Shown here: piece by piece, positions 15,145 to 44,005 of the stretch
How the letters are laid out: each line of letters starts with the position of its first letter
How positions within the stretch are numbered: position 1 is the stretch's first letter
Source: Klebsormidium nitens
Lineage: Eukaryota; Plantae; Klebsormidiophyceae
Direction: 5' to 3'
Length of the DNA: 64,000 nt
Assembly: GCA_000708835.1 (NCBI GenBank)
Contig: DF236950.1
Coordinates: 163,355-227,354, forward strand
Made by a program: the position numbers and the translations under genes
Notes under the pieces: model-generated
Told to the model about the DNA's origin: nothing
Seen by the model: only the letters and a program-made list of their open reading frames with translations
Databases searched by the model: none

Positions 15145-32371
<17,227 letters not shown>

Positions 32372-33002
32372 CACGTGGCGGGGTATGGTTCGTTTCGTAT
32401 GTGATTAGCAGAGCCTCATTGAGGAATTTTGTGCTGTAGAGTACTGGGCTCGAGTCCATCTATCTAGTTGTGACCTGCCTCGTCGAGGCTTTAGCCCGAA
32501 CGGCTTCAGGCGACAAACACATTATTTGTTCAGGTCTTGGGTACGAGTCTACATTATCTTTGTTACCGACCATCATTCTGATCCGAAGAGTGTCCCTAAT
32601 ATCTGTGCGGAGTACGTTTAAGATTGCCGTATCAAGCTCCCATTCCATCAACAGCTTCTATAGTACCACTGGACTGCATCTTCCCATGGTCTGAACGTAT
32701 GAACATCTCTTGGTTCACACGATTTTAGACATTGCCTTCTGCATGGCTGCCATGAACGATTCTAGACTCCACATGCTTAAAAGGATTCGTGCGACGCAGA
32801 TTTCGTGCTAGGATCACACGCGAACTTAATCCTAGGTTTCGTGCGGACCAGCTAGAGTGAATCAGATCACCATGCCATGTTGCAGCTGCAGCCCGGGCAT
32901 GTGCCAAAGATCTCAGTACACAGATTATACCCATCCCTAATTCTATAGCTCGTTGCAAAAGTGGTCATATGTGTGAAGCTAGACACTTGTACGATCCGAT
33001 CA

Positions 33003-33049
33003 CACGGGGCAGTTATGGTGCTTTTCAGCCCGGGGGGAAATCGCGGCAG
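33003..33049 (+). repeat. Left terminal inverted repeat
   Basis: CACGGGGCAGTTATGGTGCTTTTCAGCCCGGGGGGAAATCGCGGCAG; pairs with 41678-41724. Confidence 0.85.
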
Positions 33050-33738
33050 GTTCCGCGCGCAAACCGTGCAAATATCGCACGAATAATTACTTGCCGGTGC
33101 GCCGTGCTCCCGCCAGTACTGCGCCCGAACTTTTGATGCGGCGCGCAGAATTGCCGGGGAAATGGGGCAAAATTCGGCCGAAACCGCGCCGGTTCCGACG
33201 ATTGCAATTTCCTAGGAAGTAGTTTCGTACCGAAAACCACCTGCTTTCAGCCTCGTAACATGCAGGCGAGAATGCCCGTAATGTTACTGACGGGTGACAA
33301 ACACTGCGAACTTCGAGGAGTGTTCGGGCCAAATTGACAAATTTACACTGCCCAGTAAAGGCTACGGACCTACAGTACCTATGGTAGTACCGTACGTAGC
33401 TTTGCGCTAGCCTAGGCAGCTAGGTAGGTACCGTAGGCCTGGTACCTCGCTTCCAGGTAGGTACGCGGGCCACAGGCAGTACCGTACCTACCTAGGTACT
33501 AGTACTAGGTACCTACATATTACCTACCTTATGAACCGGTCGATGCTTTGAAATCTGGGGACCGTTGGATTCACCGGGCGGCCCGTCAGTATGGGTAAGT
33601 GGCTTGAGGAAGGTCCCGGGCGGGACGGATCTTGTAAGTTACGTACTACGGTACGTACCGGCTCTGTTCTTAAAGTCCTATGTTGGGACCCCCCTTCCGG
33701 CCTAGTGGAATGTGCCCCCACCTTCGACCACCTTCGAC

Positions 33739-36700
33739 ATGATGGAACCGAAGTGTCAATTGACCATCTTCCCACGAAATTCAAGAAGAATAGTGGTTCA
33801 CCACCAAAGCTATTATAAAGAAGAATGGCTCAACTTTCTTGACAAAAGCTTAGGAGAATGCTTTGCAAATCTCAGCTTGTGTTGTCGATATCAAGATGGA
33901 CCTACTGTATAAGTTTCCCACATACATGTCTCTTAAATTTGCAGTTCTATAGCCATCTTTTGAGGCCTTTTTTAGGGCAATCAAGAGTGAGGGGGCTAGA
34001 CTGCGAGCATGCGAGCCGTGGATAGGGGTGGCCCTGTTTCCAGCCGTCCGATATGGAGCACTGACCCCCGAGGTCCTAGACATCTGGATACACGAAGGCA
34101 GTCTCAAATGGGGCTTGAAGAACAACGATCTGCGTGGGCAGCGCGTGAAGCGCGTCGTCGTGGGCCTCGACAGGCTGCGCAGCTTAGTGAACACAGATTT
34201 GCGGAGTACAGCGCGTGGGTGCCTTAAAGGCCAGGACAATGCAAATTACTTCAATGCCCGCCTGCGCTGCCATCTAGCGAACCAGCGTGTCGAGTTCTCA
34301 GAAGCGAAGCTGCTGGTCAAGGGTAAAGAACAGACGAGGGTCAGCGTTCTGGTCCTGCCAGACGGCACTCCCCCGCTGCTGACGGGCGCGGTCTTGAGCC
34401 CACTGCTGTTTCTGAACTGGCGTGCGCGCCCCGTGCACACAGCGGAGCCGTCGGGCAAGAAGGCCAAGACCTGCAAAGCACCAGATCAGGTAAGCTTCTG
34501 AGCTGGACACACACTGCAGTGCGCGCAACTCAAGCGCGATGGTTTGCAATGCAGGCTGAGACGATCTTTGATCGCGTCTCAAGAAGCTGCTGCTGTGTTA
34601 GAATGCTCATGCTCTGCTCTCAAACTAGGCAGTGTTGCATTACCACTGGTCATTTTCAATCATGCTAGCTTTGGATCGTTGGAACCAATGTGCATTTGCT
34701 CGCTGCATTGTAGGCGCGCTCTGCGGCAGCTCCCATGGAGCAGAACTTGGGCGCCGGAGCGGCCCCGGCCTTGGAGAGGCCGCCCTNNNNNNNNNNNNNN
34801 NNNNNNNNNNNNNNNNNNNNNNNNNNNNNNNNNNNNNNNNNNNNNNNNNNNNNNNNNNNNNNNNNNNNNNNNNNNNNNNNNNNNNNNNNNNNNNNNNNNN
34901 NNNNNNNNNNNNNNNNNNNNNNNNNNNNNNNNNNNNNNNNNNNNNNNNNNNNNNNNNNNNNNNNNNNNNNNNNNNNNNNNNNNNNNNNNNNNNNNNNNNN
35001 NNNNNNNNNNNNNNNNNNNNNNNNNNNNNNNNNNNNNNNNNNNNNNNNNNNNNNNNNNNNNNNNNNNNNNNNNNNNNNNNNNNNNNNNNNNNNNNNNNNN
35101 NNNNNNNNNNNNNNNNNNNNNNNNNNNNNNNNNNNNNNNNNNNNNNNNNNNNNNNNNNNNNNNNNNNNNNNNNNNNNNNNNNNNNNNNNNNNNNNNNNNN
35201 NNNNNNNNNNNNNNNNNNNNNNNNNNNNNNNNNNNNNNNNNNNNNNNNNNNNNNNNNNNNNNNNNNNNNNNNNNNNNNNNNNNNNNNNNNNNNNNNNNNN
35301 NNNNNNNNNNNNNNNNNNNNNNNNNNNNNTTGGAGAGGCCGCCCTCGCCTCTCGTCGCCGTGCCATTCTCCCCGGGGTACCAAGCTGCCGCCGTGCTCTC
35401 CGGGGTGGCGCCTCAGTTGCTCGAGACCCCGGTGCGCCCATTCTGTGCATTGAAAGCTTCTGCAAAGTTGAACTGCCATCTTCGTTGCTCCACTCAAAAT
35501 AGCCACCTGCTTTTCTGCAGTGCGTCGAGCTGATGCGGTGAGCGACGCTTGCAATCAGAGCAGCACATGTGACACAGCTTTTGCAGGGACTCCTCTGATC
35601 ATGCATGTTTTGCTGGCACGCAGGGGATTGGCGCCTTGGGTCTAGAAGCACCTGTGCAGGCCGGCCCGGCGGGAGGTATGGTAGCCATGCTCACCGGTGA
35701 CGCCTCCCCTTTGCACGAACCCCCGGCTTTCTCCCCCATCGACGACCCAATGCCGGACAGCCCGCCGATCGCGGTGAGCTAGCCTACATGAGCACTTCGG
35801 AATCATCAGGAGCACGATGGTATATGTGAAGGTTGCGAATGCTGTTGATGTGACGTTGCGCCTGTGTCTAGCAGTGACTCGCCCGGTCAATTGAAATTTG
35901 TGTGAAACTTAGAGACCTCATTGTGTGCTCTTTGGCAAATGCAGGCGCCCCTGGACTTGCTGCAGACTGCCACCCTCGAGACTGCGGCGACGATGGCTTT
36001 TTACGCGACATCTGCCAAGGAGCTGCCTGGCCCTTCTGTGGATCCTGGCAAGGTCAGCATTCGTGCCGGAAGCCCTAGAAGGTGCTTGGATTGATGCAGT
36101 CTAGCGGCTTCTGGCAATTGTCCGTGCCAAACGTTAGCTGCGTGCTTGCTTCAAGCTCGACAACTCTTCCAAGTACAGCCAAGGAGCGCTGAGCACTGCT
36201 CTTCATGTGTGCAACGCACTGATCTGGCGACAGCGGATCACACAACTGTGCATGCCCATCTCAGTGTGCGAACTCTATGTTTGCAGCCTCAGAGCTTTGG
36301 CCAGGGCCCCGAAGCGACTATCCCCATCCTAGGCAGCGACCCGCCCGTTTCCATCTCTTTCCGAACCTCCAAGTGGTACACGGCGAACGTCGAGGTCCTG
36401 CAGGATCCGGACTGCCCGCAGAAGAAGAGGTAGGTGCTGACAGCCTTGCAGCTTNNNNNNNNNNNNNNNNNNNNNNNNNNNNNNNNNNNNNNNNNNNNNN
36501 NNNNNNNNNNNNNNNNNNNNNNNNNNNNNNNNNNNNNNNNNNNNNNNNNNNNNNNNNNNNNNNNNNNNNNNNNNNNNNNNNNNNNNNNNNNNNNNNNNNN
36601 NNNNNNNNNNNNNNNNNNNNNNNNNNNNNNNNNNNNNNNNNNNNNNNNNNNNNNNNNNNNNNNNNNNNNNNNNNNNNNNNNNNNNNNNNNNNNNNNNNNN

Positions 36701-39700
36701 NNNNNNNNNNNNNNNNNNNNNNNNNNNNNNNNNNNNNNNNNNNNNNNNNNNNNNNNNNNNNNNNNNNNNNNNNNNNNNNNNNNNNNNNNNNNNNNNNNNN
36801 NNNNNNNNNNNNNNNNNNNNNNNNNNNNNNNNNNNNNNNNNNNNNNNNNNNNNNNNNNNNNNNNNNNNNNNNNNNNNNNNNNNNNNNNNNNNNNNNNNNN
36901 NNNNNNNNNNNNNNNNNNNNNNNNNNNNNNNNNNNNNNNNNNNNNNNNNNNNNNNNNNNNNNNNNNNNNNNNNNNNNNNNNNNNNNNNNNNNNNNNNNNN
37001 NNNNNNNNNNNNNNNNNNNNNNNNNNNNNNNNNNNNNNNNNNNNNNNNNNNNNNNNNNNNNNNNNNNNNNNNNNNNNNNNNNNNNNNNNNNNNNNNNNNN
37101 NNNNCTATACGTGGCACTCATCGGACGGTGCCAGCCCCAGCCAGCGGAAAGTTCGGGACCCCGAAATGTACCTAGTTAAAGTGCGCTTTTTGACAACGGG
37201 ATGGTCAATGTAGTGTCCGACTGCGCTGCCTTGTGGCACGTTCCAGGCAATGCAGCTGAGGGGCCAAGTGGATGCTGATCCTGCCATTCAATTGATATCG
37301 TGATCCTAGGTCCAGCATGTGCCTGCGTACGGCCCGCTGACAGAAGGCCGCCGTTTTCTGTGCAGCGTCAGGGGCGACCATCTTGCGGACCTGTCCAACG
37401 ACATTCTGCTCTGCATGAAAGGCAAGCCGGTCGGCAAACACGTCGTCTCCGTCAAGGAGAGGCCCTCTGTGGACGGCGGCGGCGAGAAGTTCATCGAGCA
37501 CTTCGCGGAGCAGCACATGGGCGCCAGTGTCACGCACTCGGCTGGCGATCTTCTGAACGGGCTCTGGTGGGGCCCCAAGGGGCCGCGGGAGGGGGCCAAG
37601 TTCGTTGTCGACGTGCAGAACGTGGCCCGTGTGGGTGCTTCCAAGGAGTACGGCCAGCCGCTCGGCCCCTACTTCAAGGACGTGGATGCGGCCTTGTTCC
37701 TGCCGCCGGAGATCATGGACGCGCTGGTCGTAATCTACCGCATGATTGCGGGGGACGACGACCTGTTGCGCTTCCACCCCCCGCTCCTGGGGGTTGCAGG
37801 CGACCGGGTGAGTTACTGAGAGCTCTGTGTGCCTGGACGGATCATTCAAATGGACAGCCACTTCGACTCGAGCCCTGCTTGCGACTCGCCTCGACCGGCG
37901 GCGTGCACATGTTAGACTCTTTGTCTCGAAGCAGCTCTGCTATTTGTGCTTCCAGTGGCGAGGCTCGAGCAAGCTTTGCTCTGTCTGCCCGACTGCGCTG
38001 CTTTGTCGTACAAGCGCAAATTGTGCAATCAGGACCCCGAGCTGAATCTTGTCGTCTTGTCCTGCGTCGGCTGCAGATCCTGCTGTACTTGCCGGGCTTC
38101 CTCAGCATCGCCATCTTCCATTGCGAGGAGTGGATGTTCAAGGCGTACAACCCGAGCCTGTGCGACGTTCTGGGGCCGATGCTGAAGCGAGCCGAGGAGG
38201 ACGTCTCCGTGTGGACCTTTCTGGAGACCACCGACACCGAGGTGCTGGCGCGCATCGCGCGGGATGCGGCTCCCATCATGGGCATGTCCAAGGAACGGTC
38301 GTCTCTCGAGGCGTTCTGCCACGACAAGGACCGCATGCTGAAGGTAAGCGCACGGTGCCTATCAATGTTGTTGCTCAGCACTAGACAAGGTCTCAGAGCT
38401 CTGCAAAGGATTTCTCATGCTTCCAAGCCTGCGGTCTGTGGACTGAGGTTCGTTCAAAGCAGCACGCCGATCCTGATCTCGAGCGCAGAGACACACTGAA
38501 ACATCGCGGCCCGCTTTTGCCCATTGCAGAAGTTCCGAGGTCGACGCTGCCATTGAGAAGGTTGCACCCGAGCAGGCACCGCGCCCAACTCGGAAGGGCA
38601 GGAGCAAGCAGGCGGCCGCGTCGAGGCGCTCTGTGCTTGGCGACGTCCCGCTCCGCGTCGTGGTCCAGAGGGTGATGGAGATCATCGACACCAACGTCCC
38701 GCACGCTGTCTTTATTCTGGGGGGCCTGCGTGTCAGCTGCAACCACGCGACCCCGCAGCACATCGAGATCTTCGGGCTGAAGCACCGCTACACGATCCGC
38801 AGTCAGCGGCAGGAGGTACGGCTCGAAGTCCTGAGCAAGTGCTGCGATTGCGTTGCGGCCATAATGTGCTCCCTTGAAGCGATTTGCTTTCTGCCCGCAG
38901 CCTAATCTCGCTTTGTCGCCTCGGATCGATCTTAGGCTGCACTCGACTTGCTGGCCAAAGTTATGAGTCCTGATCACAAGTCTTCTGAAAGGCTTAAGAA
39001 AGTCCCCAGCGCTGCGTCACTGTGGGAGGTGAAACAAGTGGGTTGCAAGAGCTTTGTCGTGCAGCACTTGACCCTTCAAATTCGTCATATGCAGGCCTTC
39101 AAGAACACTTACAGCCCAGACCCCGGTCGACAAGCTGCTGCCAAAGTTCCACATGGAGAACAAAACGTTCTTCATCCTGTTGAAGGCGCTGCTCAACGCG
39201 ATGGACCGCAAGCATGTCTGGAAGGCTCGGGAGGAGTTCGAGGCCTTCGAGCGGCTGGTGCAGATCTACATCGACGACGGCCGCCGCACGCTGGAGCTCG
39301 CTGCAAAGGACCCCGATTTCTATGTGAGGCTGCAGCTGAACTGGACCGAGTCAATCTTGCTCATTAGCCTAAGTTTCGACAACCTTTGACTAGAGTCCCT
39401 TGGCATTCAGAAGGTGGCAACAATGAGCACTGTGATAAGCGTCTGAGGCGGCGAGCCACGTCTGCGATTGTCGATGCTTGTGGTTTTTAATCGCATGTCG
39501 TCACGAGCCGGCCTGAATCGTTTTAAATGGAACTTGCCACTCGGACCTTCATCTGGAGCTTGAGGGTTGCAAGATTTTGCACTACTCAGCTATTGTGCAA
39601 AACCGCTTTTGCGCTTACACAGCTAAATTCCGAGCATCGTGTTGTTGTCGGCTGCAGGAGATCGTCGAGCCGCTCGTCGCGGCGCTGGAGCGAGCGCGGT

Positions 39701-40035
39701 TGCCCATCGACACATGCGACGATTTTGTCAACTTCTCGCGCACGTACCTCTGCAACATCTGCGGCTTCGACATCCAGCACATGAAGTCGGTGTTCAACTT
39801 GGACATCTCGGACCCCGAGCCGCCGGAGTTTGAGGGCGGGCCCGAGGACCCGGCGCTCTGGGATTTTGACGTGTGCTTTGACTGCATGGAGACAGTTAGG
39901 GATCTAGGTTCGAGGAGGCGGCCGATTACCATACTCCCTAAGAAGGTGCAGTTGGTGGTGTTCTTCGGTCCGGATGTGTTGCAGGCGAAGTTGTCAGAGC
40001 ACAGGCGGATCAATAGCTGCCATTGTGACGCTTGA
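33739..40035 (+). CDS. Divergent JmjC-domain 2-oxoglutarate/Fe(II) dioxygenase (KDM4/KDM5-like fold) with an unknown N-terminal domain and a degenerate C-terminal zinc finger, roughly 900-950 aa
   Basis: Exons: 33739-33906 (tentative), 33953-34489, 34714-35431 (spans a gap), 35660-35773, 35945-36052, 36287-36429, 37366-37807, 38077-38343, ~38489-38815 (acceptor uncertain), 39120-39323, 39658-40035. LLYLPGFLSIAIFHCEEWMFKAYN aligns without gaps to KDM5-type [46 protein letters not shown]..SCNHA aligns to VPVHRCVQ..EFVLTFPRAYHAGF..AVNVA, followed by DKLL. C-terminal CNIC..CFDC. The alignments are by eye. Confidence 0.75.
34787..35330. other. Assembly gap (N run), probably spurious
   Basis: The 15-mer TGGAGAGGCCGCCCT lies on both sides (34772-34786 and 35331-35345). 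Collapsing the overlap gives the continuous frame ALERPPSPLVAV. Confidence 0.8.
36455..37104. other. Assembly gap (N run) inside a predicted intron of the JmjC gene
   Basis: The flanking donor (36430) and acceptor (37365) are phase-compatible. Confidence 0.9.
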
Positions 40036-41228
40036 AACTCAGCGGACTTGCTTGCATTTCATGATAACATTCGGGCCATTGTAATTCGAGCGAGGCAATT
40101 GATGCGCGCAGCACGCGTTTGAAGATCGTCTTAGAACATCGTTCATCGTGGATGCTTGCGTTTATACGACGATCAAAGATGACTAGGGGCTCGATGTGCA
40201 CGCCGTTGTCCTTCATTTCCTATAGCCCGTGGGCACGCACTTTAGTATATTCGATTTAAGCATTGGGATGAGAGTGACACCCAAATGGACGGCTGTGGAT
40301 AGGCCCTGTTGGCCTCGTGGGTGCTACGGAATGCTGTGCGGGCCGTCGGATGAGGAGCCGCGCACCCCAGTGTCGCAATGATACAGCCAGATATTTACGA
40401 TTCGATGCAGTGCGACATGGGTGCGCCTGTGGGTGCAAGAGGCCTCAAGTCGACGGCTCAGATGACTCTGGATACTCGTACGGATTCGGTCGAAGATTCC
40501 CCTGCTGATTTGGGTGATCTTTTGGGTGGACGACTCACGATCGGACGGCCTTCGAAGCGACCTTGCCCGAGTCTGTGCCGTCCGATTTACAATGTAGCAC
40601 CCCAGGGCGGCACCCGAATCTAGCGGCAGAATCCTGACACAAGATCGGGTCGGGTGGACCTTTGGGTGGACGAATCAAAATCGGACGGTCTTAAAATGGT
40701 TGCGTGACTCTGAGCCGTCCGATCGCCAATGTCTCACCCCAGGTCGCAGCCATATCTTGGCACAGAATCCGTACGCAGAATCGCGAACAGCGCGAATTCA
40801 AAACCGAGTTAATCGTTCGATGTGTACACAGTGGTCGAGTACCATAGTCACCGGATTGTGTATTGTACAATCCATGGCGGACCGGTCGATGGTACCAATT
40901 GTACACCATCCATAGCAGAGCAAAATTCTGATTGTACTGCAATTGTTTGTGCAGAGGTTATCAGTCAGAGGCGGAGTGCTTATTCTCTTCTTTATCCACC
41001 AATTTTACTTCATCGGACGACTCAGAATTCTTAGATAGTCATCCGAAGGTACAAACGAGCCCAAAACCCAAGCTTTAGTTGGGTTTTTCTTCAAATTCCA
41101 ATATTTTTGGTGAATATTGGTTCAGCCTACAATCAGGCATACAATCAAGTATCATTTATAAGAGCAGCGCTGATTGTATAAGATTGTACCATCCATGGCC
41201 CGGCCACATACAATCCGGTGACTATCAA

Positions 41229-41468
41229 TAGTATCCCGGGTCCAGGTTTCAGCGCCAGTGTCAATCCGGGGTCAATTTTGACACCGCCCAAAGTTTTACT
41301 TTCGAAGTGGGTCTGGACTTGCAATCTGTGCCAATCGACACTGCAAACGGCGTTCACTAGTATCCCGGGTTCAGGTTTCAGCGCCAGTGTCAATCCGGGG
41401 CCAGTTTTGACACCGCCCAAAGTTTTGCTTCTGAAGTGGGTCTGGACTTGCAATCTGTGCCAATCGAC
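41229..41468. repeat. Direct duplication of 111 bp with a 129-bp period inside the right subterminal region
   Basis: 41229-41339 versus 41358-41468; 6 mismatches, all transitions. Confidence 0.95.
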
Positions 41469-41677
41469 CAATGAGATCGCGCAGAGCTCCAAACGCTCTC
41501 TACGATGAGCCCCCTAAAAATGCTATAAGATGGCAATATTTGGGGCCAAATGACATTTTTTCCGTGGGAATATCCTCCGAAGTACCCACCGAGTCCCCAC
41601 ATCGCCCCGGAGTTCCGCCGGCCGAAAATCACGATATCGACCGAATATGCTACGGCGCGCGCCCGAAATAAATCGGT

Positions 41678-41724
41678 CTGCGGCAAATTTCCGCCGGGCT
41701 AAAAAGCACCGTAACTGTCCCGTG
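41678..41724 (-). repeat. Right terminal inverted repeat
   Basis: Reverse complement CACGGGACAGTTACGGTGCTTTTTAGCCCGGCGGAAATTTGCCGCAG; pairs with 33003-33049. Confidence 0.85.
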
Positions 41725-42438
41725 CAACCTATTATTATAGGACTAGAGCTGTATATGCACACGCTTGTGTCGGACTCATGTTTTTGAAGTATGATGTGCA
41801 GATTTTGTAATATAACTCCACAGATTATCATCCGACATAGTAAATTCACTGGGCTAGCTATATTGGGCCGGTAGGGTCACGTTACTCACGTATGTCGCTT
41901 GCTTAGGCAATGACCGTCGGTCCCATGCAACAAAATGCAAGCCTTATATACGGGTGGATGCGATGGAAGGCTTCCACTGGCCTCAGCTGCGGGTGGCTAT
42001 GGCGCACCTTGAAGAAGATACCAGCATCGGGACAATCGTATAATGTTATTACTGAAGTAAATTTGCCCACTGGCCGGGTCATCCAAGATCCATAATGTGT
42101 ACACGAGGCTGTGCTGCGCGGCAATCAGGATGCTTACCGGTATATCATGGTCAGGCATTACCACATATACGTGCATGGGGTCAAAATTTGCAAATGCCAA
42201 CTAAATGTAGGACACGAGCCTCTCAGAGGATTTGAATAACAGAAGTTTACACCACGAAGTACAGTATTTAAATCATAAACAAGGTTGCACAATGACATAA
42301 CGTGTACCTTTTGTTTCAAAAACAATGCCAGCTTTGCAACTTACAGCTTGCAATGTTTTCTCATGCCCTCAAGATTTCTTAGACCCTTGCCTTTTTCAAA
42401 ACTTGCAACACAGAACTAACTATCTATTTACAAGGTGT

Positions 42439-44005
42439 CTACAATTGGCGGAGGAACTCGGCGGCGGTGGACACGGCAGCACCGGTGATGGCGGCAGTGA
42501 CAATGTGGTTGTTGGTGCGGGCACCAGTCTCGCGGCGCAGAGAGAAGATGGCTCCGGTGGCACCGCCAGCAACAGCAGCGTTCACCTGAGGACACGAAAT
42601 GGAACGTACTTGAGATTCCAGATCGGTCAAGTTACGAACAAAGTAGCAATTCGATGTGCAAGTAATGCGTGCTAGGAGTGGAAGTGGAAGGGCGGCCATA
42701 GCAATATGCAACTGCTAACAAAGGAAAGTCCCAAGCACAAATCTTCGTATGTCACAATTACATCAGTTGAAAAGCGAAAGCCGTGAAAAGCTATTTCCCC
42801 AGCGCTCTTCCCTAACAGCTCAACCCATCCAAATCAGGCCCGTACATCACTACATCCAAGAGGATTCGATCATTCTCAACAGATTGCTGAAGCAATTTCA
42901 ATCAACGGTACTCGGGTTATCCTTTCATTCTTGATAACCCCTAGGCTGCTCTACGGATGTGTGCAGACGGGCTTACCCAGTCCCTCCGCTCACGGACGCG
43001 CTCGATGGCAATCTGCATACCCTCGTACACTCCAGCCACAGCGCCCCACTCGAGAGCATCGCTGAAAGCCCTCTTACCCTGCAGCCCAACCATAGTATGT
43101 CAGGTTGTGGTAATCTGCATTTCAGGCATTTGCAGATGGTGGCTATCCCTTGCAAGCCTATCAACAATGATCTTCGCACTGACCAGAAGCTGGCACTGAT
43201 TGCCACAAACTCCACTGCACTGCTCATTCGGGAAGTTTAGGATCTTGGTTGTCTCTTGCACGCCTATAGAAAGCTGACATCCACATTGACCAGAAGCTGA
43301 CGCTGAGTGCACGACGAGCAGTTTCTCTATCTTGAGTTAGGCATAAGACAATGAGTGTCGGTCAGAACCAAGCATGGTAACAAAGCTAGCGCAGTGCAGT
43401 AGCCTAGACACTTACCGCGTTCTCAAGGTGGTGCTTGGTCACTCCCTCCCGTCTGGTAGCATCATAGGCCTCGTGTGCCAGAGCCTGAGAGGCGCCCACT
43501 GCAGAACAAGAAAGGAAAGGTCAGCCCAACAATGTTCTAACTTTCTAGAGTCAAGGTTCTTCCACAATGTCGTTCTTACTACAATCGCAGCCTGCAAGCC
43601 TGTTTCCATTTACAATCGCTTGATCTGTCTGCGTGGACAGGAAGTTAAGGTAATGAAGAGGACTTTCACAAGAAGTACTGACTCAAGCACATGGCACTAG
43701 CTTACCTAGGCCGACATTGATAAAAGCTTCCAACACCGAGTTCGCAGTTGAATTGTCCGTGTTCAGTCTGATACGAGTAGGCAGCGCGACCGCTTTATCT
43801 GTGCCCCTGGAGTACACCATGATTGCTAGGGGTGAATCTGCAATAGGAAGAATGAGCGGAACCCCTCAGCTCCAAGTTTTCTTGACTCACCTAGACCAAC
43901 ATTGACAAAAGCCTCTGCAATGCTGTTGCCAACACTTGAATTTGTGTTCAATCTGATCCTGTTCGGGAGTGCAATAGCTTTGTCGGTTCCCCTGGAGTAG
44001 ACCAT
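42439..44005 (-). CDS. OEP16: Plastid outer envelope pore protein OEP16 (Tim17/22/23-PRAT family) with a duplicated first coding exon
   Basis: First coding exon 44005-43891 or 43820-43706, then 43498-43416, 43078-42977 and 42585-42439, all in phase. Peptides EAFVNVGLVGASQALAHEAY..HLENA, LEWGAVAGVYEGMQIAIERVRERRDWVNAAVAGGATGA and AAITGAAVSTAAEFL are collinear with plant OEP16. Likely upstream 5'UTR exon with GTAAGT donor at 44595. Confidence 0.88.

What the first reader, a model, noticed from the sequence alone, without database searches (positions are those of the whole stretch)
33003..41724. TIR transposon carrying a histone-demethylase-like JmjC gene and no transposase: candidate anti-silencing cargo
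Seen in sequence: 31-bp inverted termini starting CACGGG (28/31 identical), a CA dinucleotide outside both ends, repeat-rich subtermini, and one intact spliced gene filling most of the interior. Established: CAC-starting TIRs with 2-3 bp TSDs typify CACTA/CMC elements. Some DNA transposons carry epigenetic counter-measures, such as VANC in Arabidopsis VANDAL elements and TET/JBP dioxygenases linked to fungal transposons. KDM4/KDM5-type JmjC enzymes remove histone lysine methylation. Inference: the element may carry its own chromatin eraser to escape H3K9/H3K27 silencing, or the gene may be a Pack-CACTA-style capture that stayed under selection. The two remaining gaps (544 and 650 nt) are too small to hide a full transposase.
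Basis: partly seen in the sequence, partly recalled or inferred. Interest (0 to 1): 0.92.

Follow-up and report, generated by a model that had tools for sequence, protein, structure and literature searches.

The report
Inverted-repeat-bounded segment carrying one frameshifted gene
An 8.7-kb stretch of the green alga Klebsormidium nitens is bounded by real inverted repeats like a transposon without a transposase, but its single gene could not be shown to be a histone demethylase, and its main mRNA is out of frame, so it is not an intact anti-silencing gene.

Summary
The inverted termini are real: 33003-33049 and 41678-41724, 47 nt at 83% (outer 31 nt 28/31), CAC...GTG ends, CA on both outer sides, and unique in the window. 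The segment lies between two convergent host genes, an ABC transporter and a Tim17/OEP16 gene. It holds one transcribed 10-exon gene, KFL_000010310 of Klebsormidium nitens, annotated as a 771-aa hypothetical protein.

Two claims fail. First, JmjC identity has no statistical support. Pfam, PDB sequence and profile searches and the protein atlas gave nothing, and two AlphaFold runs were unusable. Only a collinear HxE...H motif pattern, conserved in a few distant homologues, resembles KDM4/5. Second, the gene is not intact as transcribed. RNA contigs from three runs use acceptors at 38530 and 39095, not the annotated 38576 and 39186. That puts the mRNA out of frame twice and stops it after 528 aa, before the distal His. 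A sister organism lacks the two 4-nt extras but has its own 2-nt deletion.

No transposase, second copy or empty site was found, and the means to look were poor. Most likely this is a fossil non-autonomous CACTA/Transib-clade-like element, or a gene flanked by repeat remnants.

Other unverified notes of this scan report JmjC-like genes beside transposases elsewhere in this genome.

The parts
33001..33002 (.). CA dinucleotide outside the left end (possible 2-bp target-site duplication)
   Evidence: matches 41725-41726; 1/16 by chance
33003..33049 (+). left terminal inverted repeat, starts CACGGGG
33591..33594 (+). annotated first coding exon (ATGG only); the 5' exon probably starts some 200 nt upstream, inside the segment
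   Evidence: RNA runs hold 36-38% of the words of 33003-34786
34044..34489 (+). exon 2 (annotation; lineage-specific N-terminal part)
34787..35329 (.). assembly gap 1, inside the annotated intron 34490-35623; continuity not verified by RNA joints
35624..35773 (+). exon 3; its 3' end is confirmed by the loose ends of RNA contigs before 35944
35945..36052 (+). exon 4
   Evidence: RNA joint 36050->36285 in 4 runs
36287..36429 (+). exon 5; followed either by 37366 or by an exon absent from the window
   Evidence: joints and loose ends at 36429
36455..37104 (.). assembly gap 2, inside an intron; hides an alternative exon and/or a nested repeat
37105..37215 (.). edge of a repeated, transcribed element that runs out of gap 2
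   Evidence: RNA contigs carry 676 nt before 37105 and diverge from the window after 37215; C/T variant at 37154
37366..37807 (+). exon 6, the family-specific conserved region (YFKD[IV]D ... HPPxxGVxGxR); the query that found P0001-P0005
38077..38343 (+). exon 7 with LLYLPG...FHCEEW..AYN (His codon 38119-38121, Glu codon 38125-38127): the HxE motif
38530..38815 (+). exon 8 as seen in RNA (annotation starts it at 38576); carries VVVQR...VPHAVF...SCNHAT (distal His codon 38702-38704) in a frame shifted +1 from exon 7
38537..38540 (+). 4 extra nt (GAGG) relative to the sister organism's mRNA; breaks the conserved F-L-D-A-A reading
   Evidence: (loose end before 38541 in X10)
38554..38556 (+). TGA that ends the reading frame of the RNA-supported mRNA after 528 aa
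39095..39323 (+). exon 9 as seen in RNA (annotation starts it at 39186)
39124..39127 (+). second 4-nt extra relative to the sister organism; shifts the frame between the conserved AF... start and the ...FILLKALL part
   Evidence: (table 4)
39658..40035 (+). last exon, Cys/His-rich C-terminal part (CxxC ... CxxC); weak look-alike of C1/ZZ-type zinc fingers
40512..40783 (.). two ~140-bp direct repeats, 73% identical
40845..41080 (.). piece with a diverged (94%) transcribed copy elsewhere in the genome
   Evidence: X7 record 12
41225..41468 (.). 129-bp tandem duplication, 1.9 copies, 93-94%
41678..41724 (-). right terminal inverted repeat, ends CCCGTG
41725..41726 (.). CA dinucleotide outside the right end

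Best explanation
The 8,722-bp segment is most likely a fossil, non-autonomous cut-and-paste DNA transposon of the CACTA/EnSpm-Mirage-Chapaev-Transib kind. It would have been inserted between the 3' ends of two convergent host genes by a transposase supplied in trans. That step is inferred. Its only gene, KFL_000010310, is a real, spliced, transcribed member of a small lineage-restricted family. The conserved core of that family shows KDM4/5-like motifs in the right order, followed by a Cys/His-rich tail. In this strain the gene is decaying. Two 4-nt insertions put the main mRNA out of frame, so translation should stop after 528 aa, downstream of the HxE motif but upstream of the distal His and the zinc-finger-like tail. 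That much is shown. The copy therefore cannot make a complete dioxygenase-like protein from its main transcript. Any past role for the family, whether chromatin-related or not, is inferred only from motifs.
For: The TIRs are far beyond chance and unique in the window. The ends are CAC...GTG with CA/CA flanks, which fits the clade as PMC12730594 describes it. The annotated neighbours are an ABC transporter whose CDS ends at 32371 (+) and a Tim17-family gene at 42439-43820 (-). Without the segment the two stop codons would be 1,346 bp apart. No transposase domain was found. The gene's structure comes from RNA contigs of three K. nitens runs and one run of a ~97%-identical relative. The annotated model is reproduced exactly, and the RNA-supported model stops after 528 aa. 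The residues skipped by the annotated model are conserved in distant homologues: LDAAC, and AF...FILL. Between K. nitens and the relative, 18 of 34 substitutions are synonymous in the protein-like frames, against about 7 of 34 in the other frames (binomial p = 0.002 at a 28% expectation). Yet three frameshifting indels separate the two. Past constraint plus private decay is the pattern usual for transposon genes and for young pseudogenes. One piece of the 3' non-coding part has a 94% transcribed copy elsewhere.
Against: I found no second copy of the termini. The window holds none, nor do the JGI metagenome contigs, the predicted proteins or the scan's index. None of these covers the rest of the K. 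nitens genome, so the blank is weak. The 2-bp flank match is weak evidence. The subterminal regions lack the repeat arrays typical of CACTA elements. A distant homologue on a 165-kb contig has no inverted repeats within +/-10 kb and no transposase nearby. No paralogue of 424-1349 aa exists in the protein collection, so nothing shows that the gene is multi-copy.
Confidence: 0.5

Rival explanations
1. An ordinary resident host gene that happens to be flanked by two remnants of one repeat family in opposite orientation, for example truncated copies from separate insertions. The segment never moved as a unit.
For: The gene family is old: 30-47% identical homologues have the same exon boundaries in other uncultured eukaryote contigs, without inverted repeats around the one long locus. 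The gene is single-copy among annotated proteins. Only a 2-bp flank match exists. The subtermini have little in common.
Against: Each remnant would have to be cut so that exactly one outward-facing terminus survives, with no partner terminus nearby. The arms start at the same CAC on both sides. What remains outside them is just the length of two 3' UTRs.
Confidence: 0.3
2. One reading: a mobile element whose intact JmjC demethylase removes H3K9/H3K27 methylation to keep the element from being silenced.
For: An HxE...H motif pattern is conserved in homologues and collinear with KDM4/5-type cores (the comparison with KDM4/5 is from memory). The gene is transcribed. Unverified notes of this scan place JmjC-like genes beside MULE, KDZ and Transib-type transposases elsewhere in this genome.
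Against: No JmjC or cupin match appears in Pfam at E<=10 for the full model or for any homologue fragment, in PDB by sequence or profile, or in the atlas. The structure models are unusable. The main mRNA stops before the distal His. The relative's mRNA has its own 2-nt deletion 7 nt before the HxE codons.
Confidence: 0.05
3. The segment was brought in by another route, for example as a fragment of a larger mobile or viral island or by a rearrangement that created inverted ends. The gene would be foreign cargo of that event rather than of a CACTA-like transposon.
For: The family is very small and patchy: 5 clusters among 1.84 billion representatives. Other notes report viral islands in this genome (unverified).
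Against: No relative was found in viral contigs. G+C content is like the surroundings. The gene has many GT..AG introns, and their positions are shared with homologues.
Confidence: 0.1

Closest known systems
Non-autonomous CACTA/EnSpm-Mirage-Chapaev-Transib (CMCT clade) DNA transposons, including gene-carrying Pack-CACTA-type elements
   Same: CAC...GTG termini, imperfect TIRs of tens of nt, a possible 2-bp duplication within the clade's 2-5 bp range (PMC12730594), no transposase, and host-like spliced gene content inside.
   Different: No family copies, no transposase partner and no empty site are known. The subterminal repeat arrays are weak. The inside is one complete 10-exon transcription unit with its own 5' end, rather than gene fragments. 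No parent gene was found in the genome.
Transposons that carry epigenetic counter-measures: VANDAL21 VANC in Arabidopsis (from memory) and TET/JBP-encoding fungal DNA transposons (PMC12730594)
   Same: The idea of a non-transposase gene that rides inside TIRs and could act on chromatin marks.
   Different: In those systems the accessory gene sits beside a transposase in multi-copy families, and its family assignment is statistically secure. Here there is no transposase and no copies, the enzyme family is unproven, and the reading frame is broken.
KDM4/KDM5-type JmjC histone demethylases
   Same: The order of short motifs matches: LY.G....H.E(D/E)....(S/A).N, then ..W, then EAF..(H/D)K, then V.Q..G..V....H.......G.....S.NFA(T). 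The pattern is conserved in the homologues. The comparison with KDM4/5 is recalled from memory.
   Different: There is no significant profile or structure match. No JmjN, PHD, ARID or C5HC2 domain was detected. The Lys of the G.pK.W 2-oxoglutarate-binding motif (from memory) is not evident in any member ((G)DVxVW). The long N-terminal part and exon 6 are family-specific.
Transcribed unitary pseudogenes / young decaying genes
   Same: The gene is spliced and expressed. It has a premature stop 490 nt before the last exon junction, private frameshifts in two close relatives, and a residual excess of synonymous change.
   Different: It lies exactly between inverted repeats, and an annotated alternative-acceptor model would keep it open.

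Membership tests
CMCT-clade (CACTA/EnSpm, Mirage, Chapaev, Transib) DNA transposon | Termini 5'-CA(C)...(G)TG-3' in terminal inverted repeats | tested here: met
   CACGGGG... and ...CCCGTG; 47 nt at 83%, outer 31 nt 28/31; 0 expected by chance
CMCT-clade (CACTA/EnSpm, Mirage, Chapaev, Transib) DNA transposon | Target-site duplication of 2-5 bp | tested here: inconclusive
   CA/CA only; 3-, 4-, 5- and 8-bp flanks do not match; 1/16 by chance
CMCT-clade (CACTA/EnSpm, Mirage, Chapaev, Transib) DNA transposon | DDE transposase of the clade, in the element or in an autonomous partner with the same termini | tested here: not met
   No transposase domain in any ORF piece of the segment. A partner could not be searched for in the rest of the genome. 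The two gaps are unread.
CMCT-clade (CACTA/EnSpm, Mirage, Chapaev, Transib) DNA transposon | Repeated family with paired copies, or an empty site that shows mobility | tested here: inconclusive
   None in the window, in JGI metagenome contigs, among predicted proteins or in the scan's index. None of these covers the rest of the K. nitens genome.
CMCT-clade (CACTA/EnSpm, Mirage, Chapaev, Transib) DNA transposon | Subterminal arrays of short transposase-binding repeats (typical of CACTA) | tested here: inconclusive
   Shared 8-mers are at chance level in the symmetric orientation and about 3 sd above chance in the other. No array was found.
JmjC-domain Fe(II)/2-oxoglutarate dioxygenase | Significant match to a JmjC/cupin profile or to a solved JmjC protein | tested here: not met
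   Pfam gives 0 families at E<=10 for the 771-aa model and no JmjC hit in 15 family fragments. PDB phmmer and a family profile gave nothing. The atlas gave no JmjC cluster.
JmjC-domain Fe(II)/2-oxoglutarate dioxygenase | HxD/E...H iron-binding triad | tested here: inconclusive
   H446-x-E448 and H563 of the annotated model are conserved in homologues. In the RNA-supported mRNA of this copy, H563 is out of frame.
JmjC-domain Fe(II)/2-oxoglutarate dioxygenase | Double-stranded beta-helix fold | tested here: inconclusive
   AlphaFold2 mean pLDDT was 32 (single sequence) and 42 (11-row alignment). Foldseek found nothing at E<=0.001; KDM3B appears only at E = 8.9.
JmjC-domain Fe(II)/2-oxoglutarate dioxygenase | 2-oxoglutarate-binding residues | not tested
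   Needs a trusted alignment to a solved JmjC structure, and none could be made here.
Pack-type gene-capturing non-autonomous transposon | Inner sequence derived from a host gene that still exists elsewhere in the genome | tested here: not met
   No other protein of 424-1349 aa matches the model. Exon 6 finds only this protein in K. nitens.

The most novel reading that the evidence does not exclude
Klebsormidium DNA transposons of several superfamilies carry a fast-evolving JmjC-like (KDM4/5-derived) accessory gene. This segment would be a non-autonomous, decaying member of such a family: a green-lineage counterpart of the TET/JBP-carrying fungal transposons. The evidence does not exclude it. 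The motifs are conserved, the segment is TIR-bounded, the gene shows past purifying selection with private frameshifts, and other unverified notes of this scan place JmjC-like genes beside MULE, KDZ and Transib-type transposases in the same genome.
Probability: 0.12. Interest if true: 0.8.

Novelty: new member of a known kind. Interest (0 to 1): 0.35.

Why it matters
If the termini prove to belong to a mobile family, this would be a rare case of a DNA transposon moving a complete multi-exon gene in a streptophyte alga close to the land-plant lineage. Together with the other JmjC-beside-transposase notes, it could point to histone-mark erasers as transposon cargo. As it stands, the main value is corrective in three ways. 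The public gene model KFL_000010310 is kept open by two acceptor sites that RNA does not support. The 'JmjC' label is unproven. And the copy is frameshifted, so it should not be used as an example of anti-silencing cargo.

Tried and rejected
- Pfam on 20 ORF pieces, on the full model and on 15 family fragments gave no domain.
- PDB by sequence (four queries) and by family profile gave only chance hits.
- The protein atlas, run three times, gave no JmjC. The tail gave only a weak C1/ZZ zinc-finger look-alike at score 0.69.
- AlphaFold2 was run on the single sequence and on an 11-row fragment alignment. Both models were too poor to use, and the Foldseek result is meaningless.
- The TIR pattern was absent from JGI metagenome contigs.
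- A profile of translated TIR and subterminal sequence found no proteins.
- The last-exon ORF found no proteins.
- The search for related loci with the exon-6 alignment found no confirmed relative in metagenome or viral contigs.
- Exact look-ups of two ORFs next to gap 2, meant to fetch contigs that fill the gap, were not on record.
- Rfam and tRNA scans of the segment found nothing.
- TIR-like sequence was absent from the homologue loci.
- A Transib assignment was rejected for lack of a 5-bp duplication.
- Two complete MITEs flanking the gene were rejected because neither end has a partner terminus nearby.
- An assembly artefact was rejected because the arms differ at 8 of 47 positions and the DNA runs hold 93-97% of the words.
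Full report
**What is at the coordinates.**
- The 31-nt terminus has exactly two matches in the 64-kb window: 33003-33033 (+) and 41694-41724 (-), with 3 mismatches. None is expected in shuffles.
- The pairing extends to 47 nt at 83% (33003-33049 / 41678-41724).
- The arms start at CAC on both sides. Directly outside lie CA (33001-33002) and CA (41725-41726).
- No 3-, 4-, 5- or 8-bp duplication fits, so the target-site evidence is a 1-in-16 coincidence at best.
- Looser searches find no further terminus in the window. Self-BLAST of the segment finds only two internal tandem duplications.
- Beyond the 47-nt arms the two ends share almost nothing. 'Repeat-rich subtermini' is therefore weak.

**Organism and setting.**
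- A search with one exon returned the locus's own annotated protein, P0001. It is 771 aa, named 'hypothetical protein KFL_000010310 [Klebsormidium nitens]', on scaffold DF236950 of GCA_000708835.1.
- Its CDS spans window 33591-40035. I reproduced the 10-exon model exactly.
- Upstream is an ABC transporter whose CDS ends at 32371 (+). Downstream is a Tim17-family (OEP16) gene at 42439-43820 (-).
- The inverted repeats thus enclose 8,722 bp of a 10,068-bp space between two convergent stop codons. That leaves 632 and 714 bp, about two 3' UTRs. This is what an insertion between two genes would look like, but it does not prove one.

**The gene is real and spliced.**
- Logan RNA contigs from three K. 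nitens runs (X6-X8) and one run of a close relative (X10, about 97% identical in exons) were laid on 35901-41900.
- They give GT..AG joints at 36052|36287, 36429|37366, 37807|38077, 38343|38530, 38815|39095 and 39323|39658.
- The exon 1-2 region is transcribed in the same study.

**The assembly gaps.**
- Gap 2 lies in an intron. Contigs of X7 and X10 join 36429 to 37366 in frame.
- Other K. nitens contigs leave 36429 for 28 nt that the window lacks.
- A transcribed repeat runs out of the gap and ends at 37215.
- Gap 1 lies in the annotated intron. I did not verify it with joints.

**The gene is not intact as transcribed.**
- The annotated model keeps the frame by starting exons 8 and 9 at 38576 and 39186. 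No contig shows those acceptors.
- The 38530 acceptor is seen in three K. nitens runs. The 39095 acceptor is seen in two K. nitens runs and in the relative.
- With the observed joints, the frame running from the annotated ATG through the HxE exon meets TGA at 38554-38556 after 528 aa. That is 490 nt before the last junction.
- The protein-like frames of exons 8 and 9-10 are each displaced by +1.
- The relative's mRNA lacks 4 nt at 38537-38540 and 4 nt at about 39124-39127. Both deletions restore the frame.
- The residues the annotated model skips are conserved in distant homologues: F-L-D-A-A matches LDAAC, and AF...FILL is also conserved. The K. nitens state is therefore derived: two frameshifting insertions.
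- The relative has its own 2-nt deletion at 38112, 7 nt before the HxE codons.
- Of 34 listed substitutions between the two, 18 are synonymous in the protein-like frames, against about 7 in the other frames (p = 0.002 at a 28% expectation).
- Together this gives real coding frames, past purifying selection, and recent private decay in both lineages.

**Is it JmjC?**
- Statistically, no test supports it.
  - Pfam finds nothing at E<=10 in the full model, in the ORF pieces or in 15 family fragments.
  - phmmer and a family profile find no solved JmjC.
  - The language-model atlas finds none.
  - AlphaFold2 gave mean pLDDT 32 and 42. The Foldseek list is noise, with KDM3B at E = 8.9.
- What exists is a motif pattern.
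  - The motifs are LLYLxG....H[CLM]EE..F.AYN, then (G)DVxVW, then EAFCHDK, then VVxQ[RK]PGQVV...PHxV....G.VR.S.N[FY]A.
  - The pattern is conserved between the window and homologues on uncultured-eukaryote contigs L001 and L003-L005. These are 30-47% identical and share exon boundaries.
  - From memory, this order resembles the KDM4/5 core. I treat that as a lead and put JmjC ancestry at about 45%.
- The C-terminal exon is Cys/His-rich, with a weak C1/ZZ-like signal.
- The family is tiny: 5 clusters among 1.84 billion representatives for exon 6. No paralogue of 424-1349 aa exists.

**Is it a transposon?**
- For:
  - The termini are homologous beyond doubt and of the CAC...GTG type.
  - A 2-bp flank match lies within the 2-5 bp range of the CACTA/EnSpm-Mirage-Chapaev-Transib clade (PMC12730594).
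  - There is no transposase.
  - The segment sits between two genes.
  - One inner piece (40845-41080) has a 94% transcribed copy elsewhere.
- Against, or untested:
  - No other copy of the termini was found anywhere I could look. None of these sources holds the rest of this genome.
  - The homologue on a 165-kb contig has no inverted repeats or transposase within 10 kb.
- My odds are as follows.

| Reading | Probability |
|---|---|
| Fossil non-autonomous element | about 0.5 |
| Resident gene between repeat remnants | about 0.3 |
| Another insertion route | about 0.1 |
| Functional anti-silencing cargo | about 0.05 |

**Earlier notes of this scan.** All are unverified except where stated. They report JmjC-like genes beside MULE, KDZ and Transib-type transposases, and a JmjC gene spliced to a Mutator-derived gene, elsewhere in this genome. 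They keep the more novel reading alive, but I did not test them.

**Verdict.** It is not supported for 'intact JmjC under selection' or for 'anti-silencing'.

Noticed in passing
window 38537-38540 and 39124-39127: Both frameshifting 4-nt extras of the K. nitens copy create the same 7-mer, GGTCGAC. This may be coincidence, or footprints of some insertion/excision or repair process.
   Followed up: partly
window 37105-37215 and gap 36455-37104: RNA contigs carry 676 nt before 37105, match 37105-37215, then diverge from the window. There is a C/T variant at 37154. This looks like a repeated, transcribed element nested in the intron, and it probably caused the assembly gap.
   Followed up: partly
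window 36429 / gap 2: K. nitens RNA contigs continue from exon end 36429 into 28 nt (ACACAGCC...) absent from the window, while other contigs join 36429 to 37366. An alternative exon is probably hidden in the gap.
   Followed up: no
window 40845-41080: One RNA contig lies here with 14 mismatches in 236 nt. A diverged second copy of this non-coding piece is transcribed elsewhere in the genome.
   Followed up: no
window 33591-33594: The public gene model starts with a 4-nt coding exon (ATGG) spliced to 34044. The model also uses two acceptors (38576, 39186) that RNA contigs do not show, so KFL_000010310 needs re-annotation.
   Followed up: yes
window 41225-41468 and 40512-40783: A 129-bp tandem duplication (93-94%) and two ~140-bp direct repeats (73%) lie in the 3' non-coding part of the segment.
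   Followed up: partly
window 33003-34786: An air-metagenome DNA run holds 9% of the sampled words of this stretch, so this alga or a very close relative is present in airborne DNA.
   Followed up: no
L003 1529-1924 (-): The distant homologue's 165-kb contig carries a zf-MYND gene about 8 kb upstream. No transposase was recorded within +/-10 kb.
   Followed up: no
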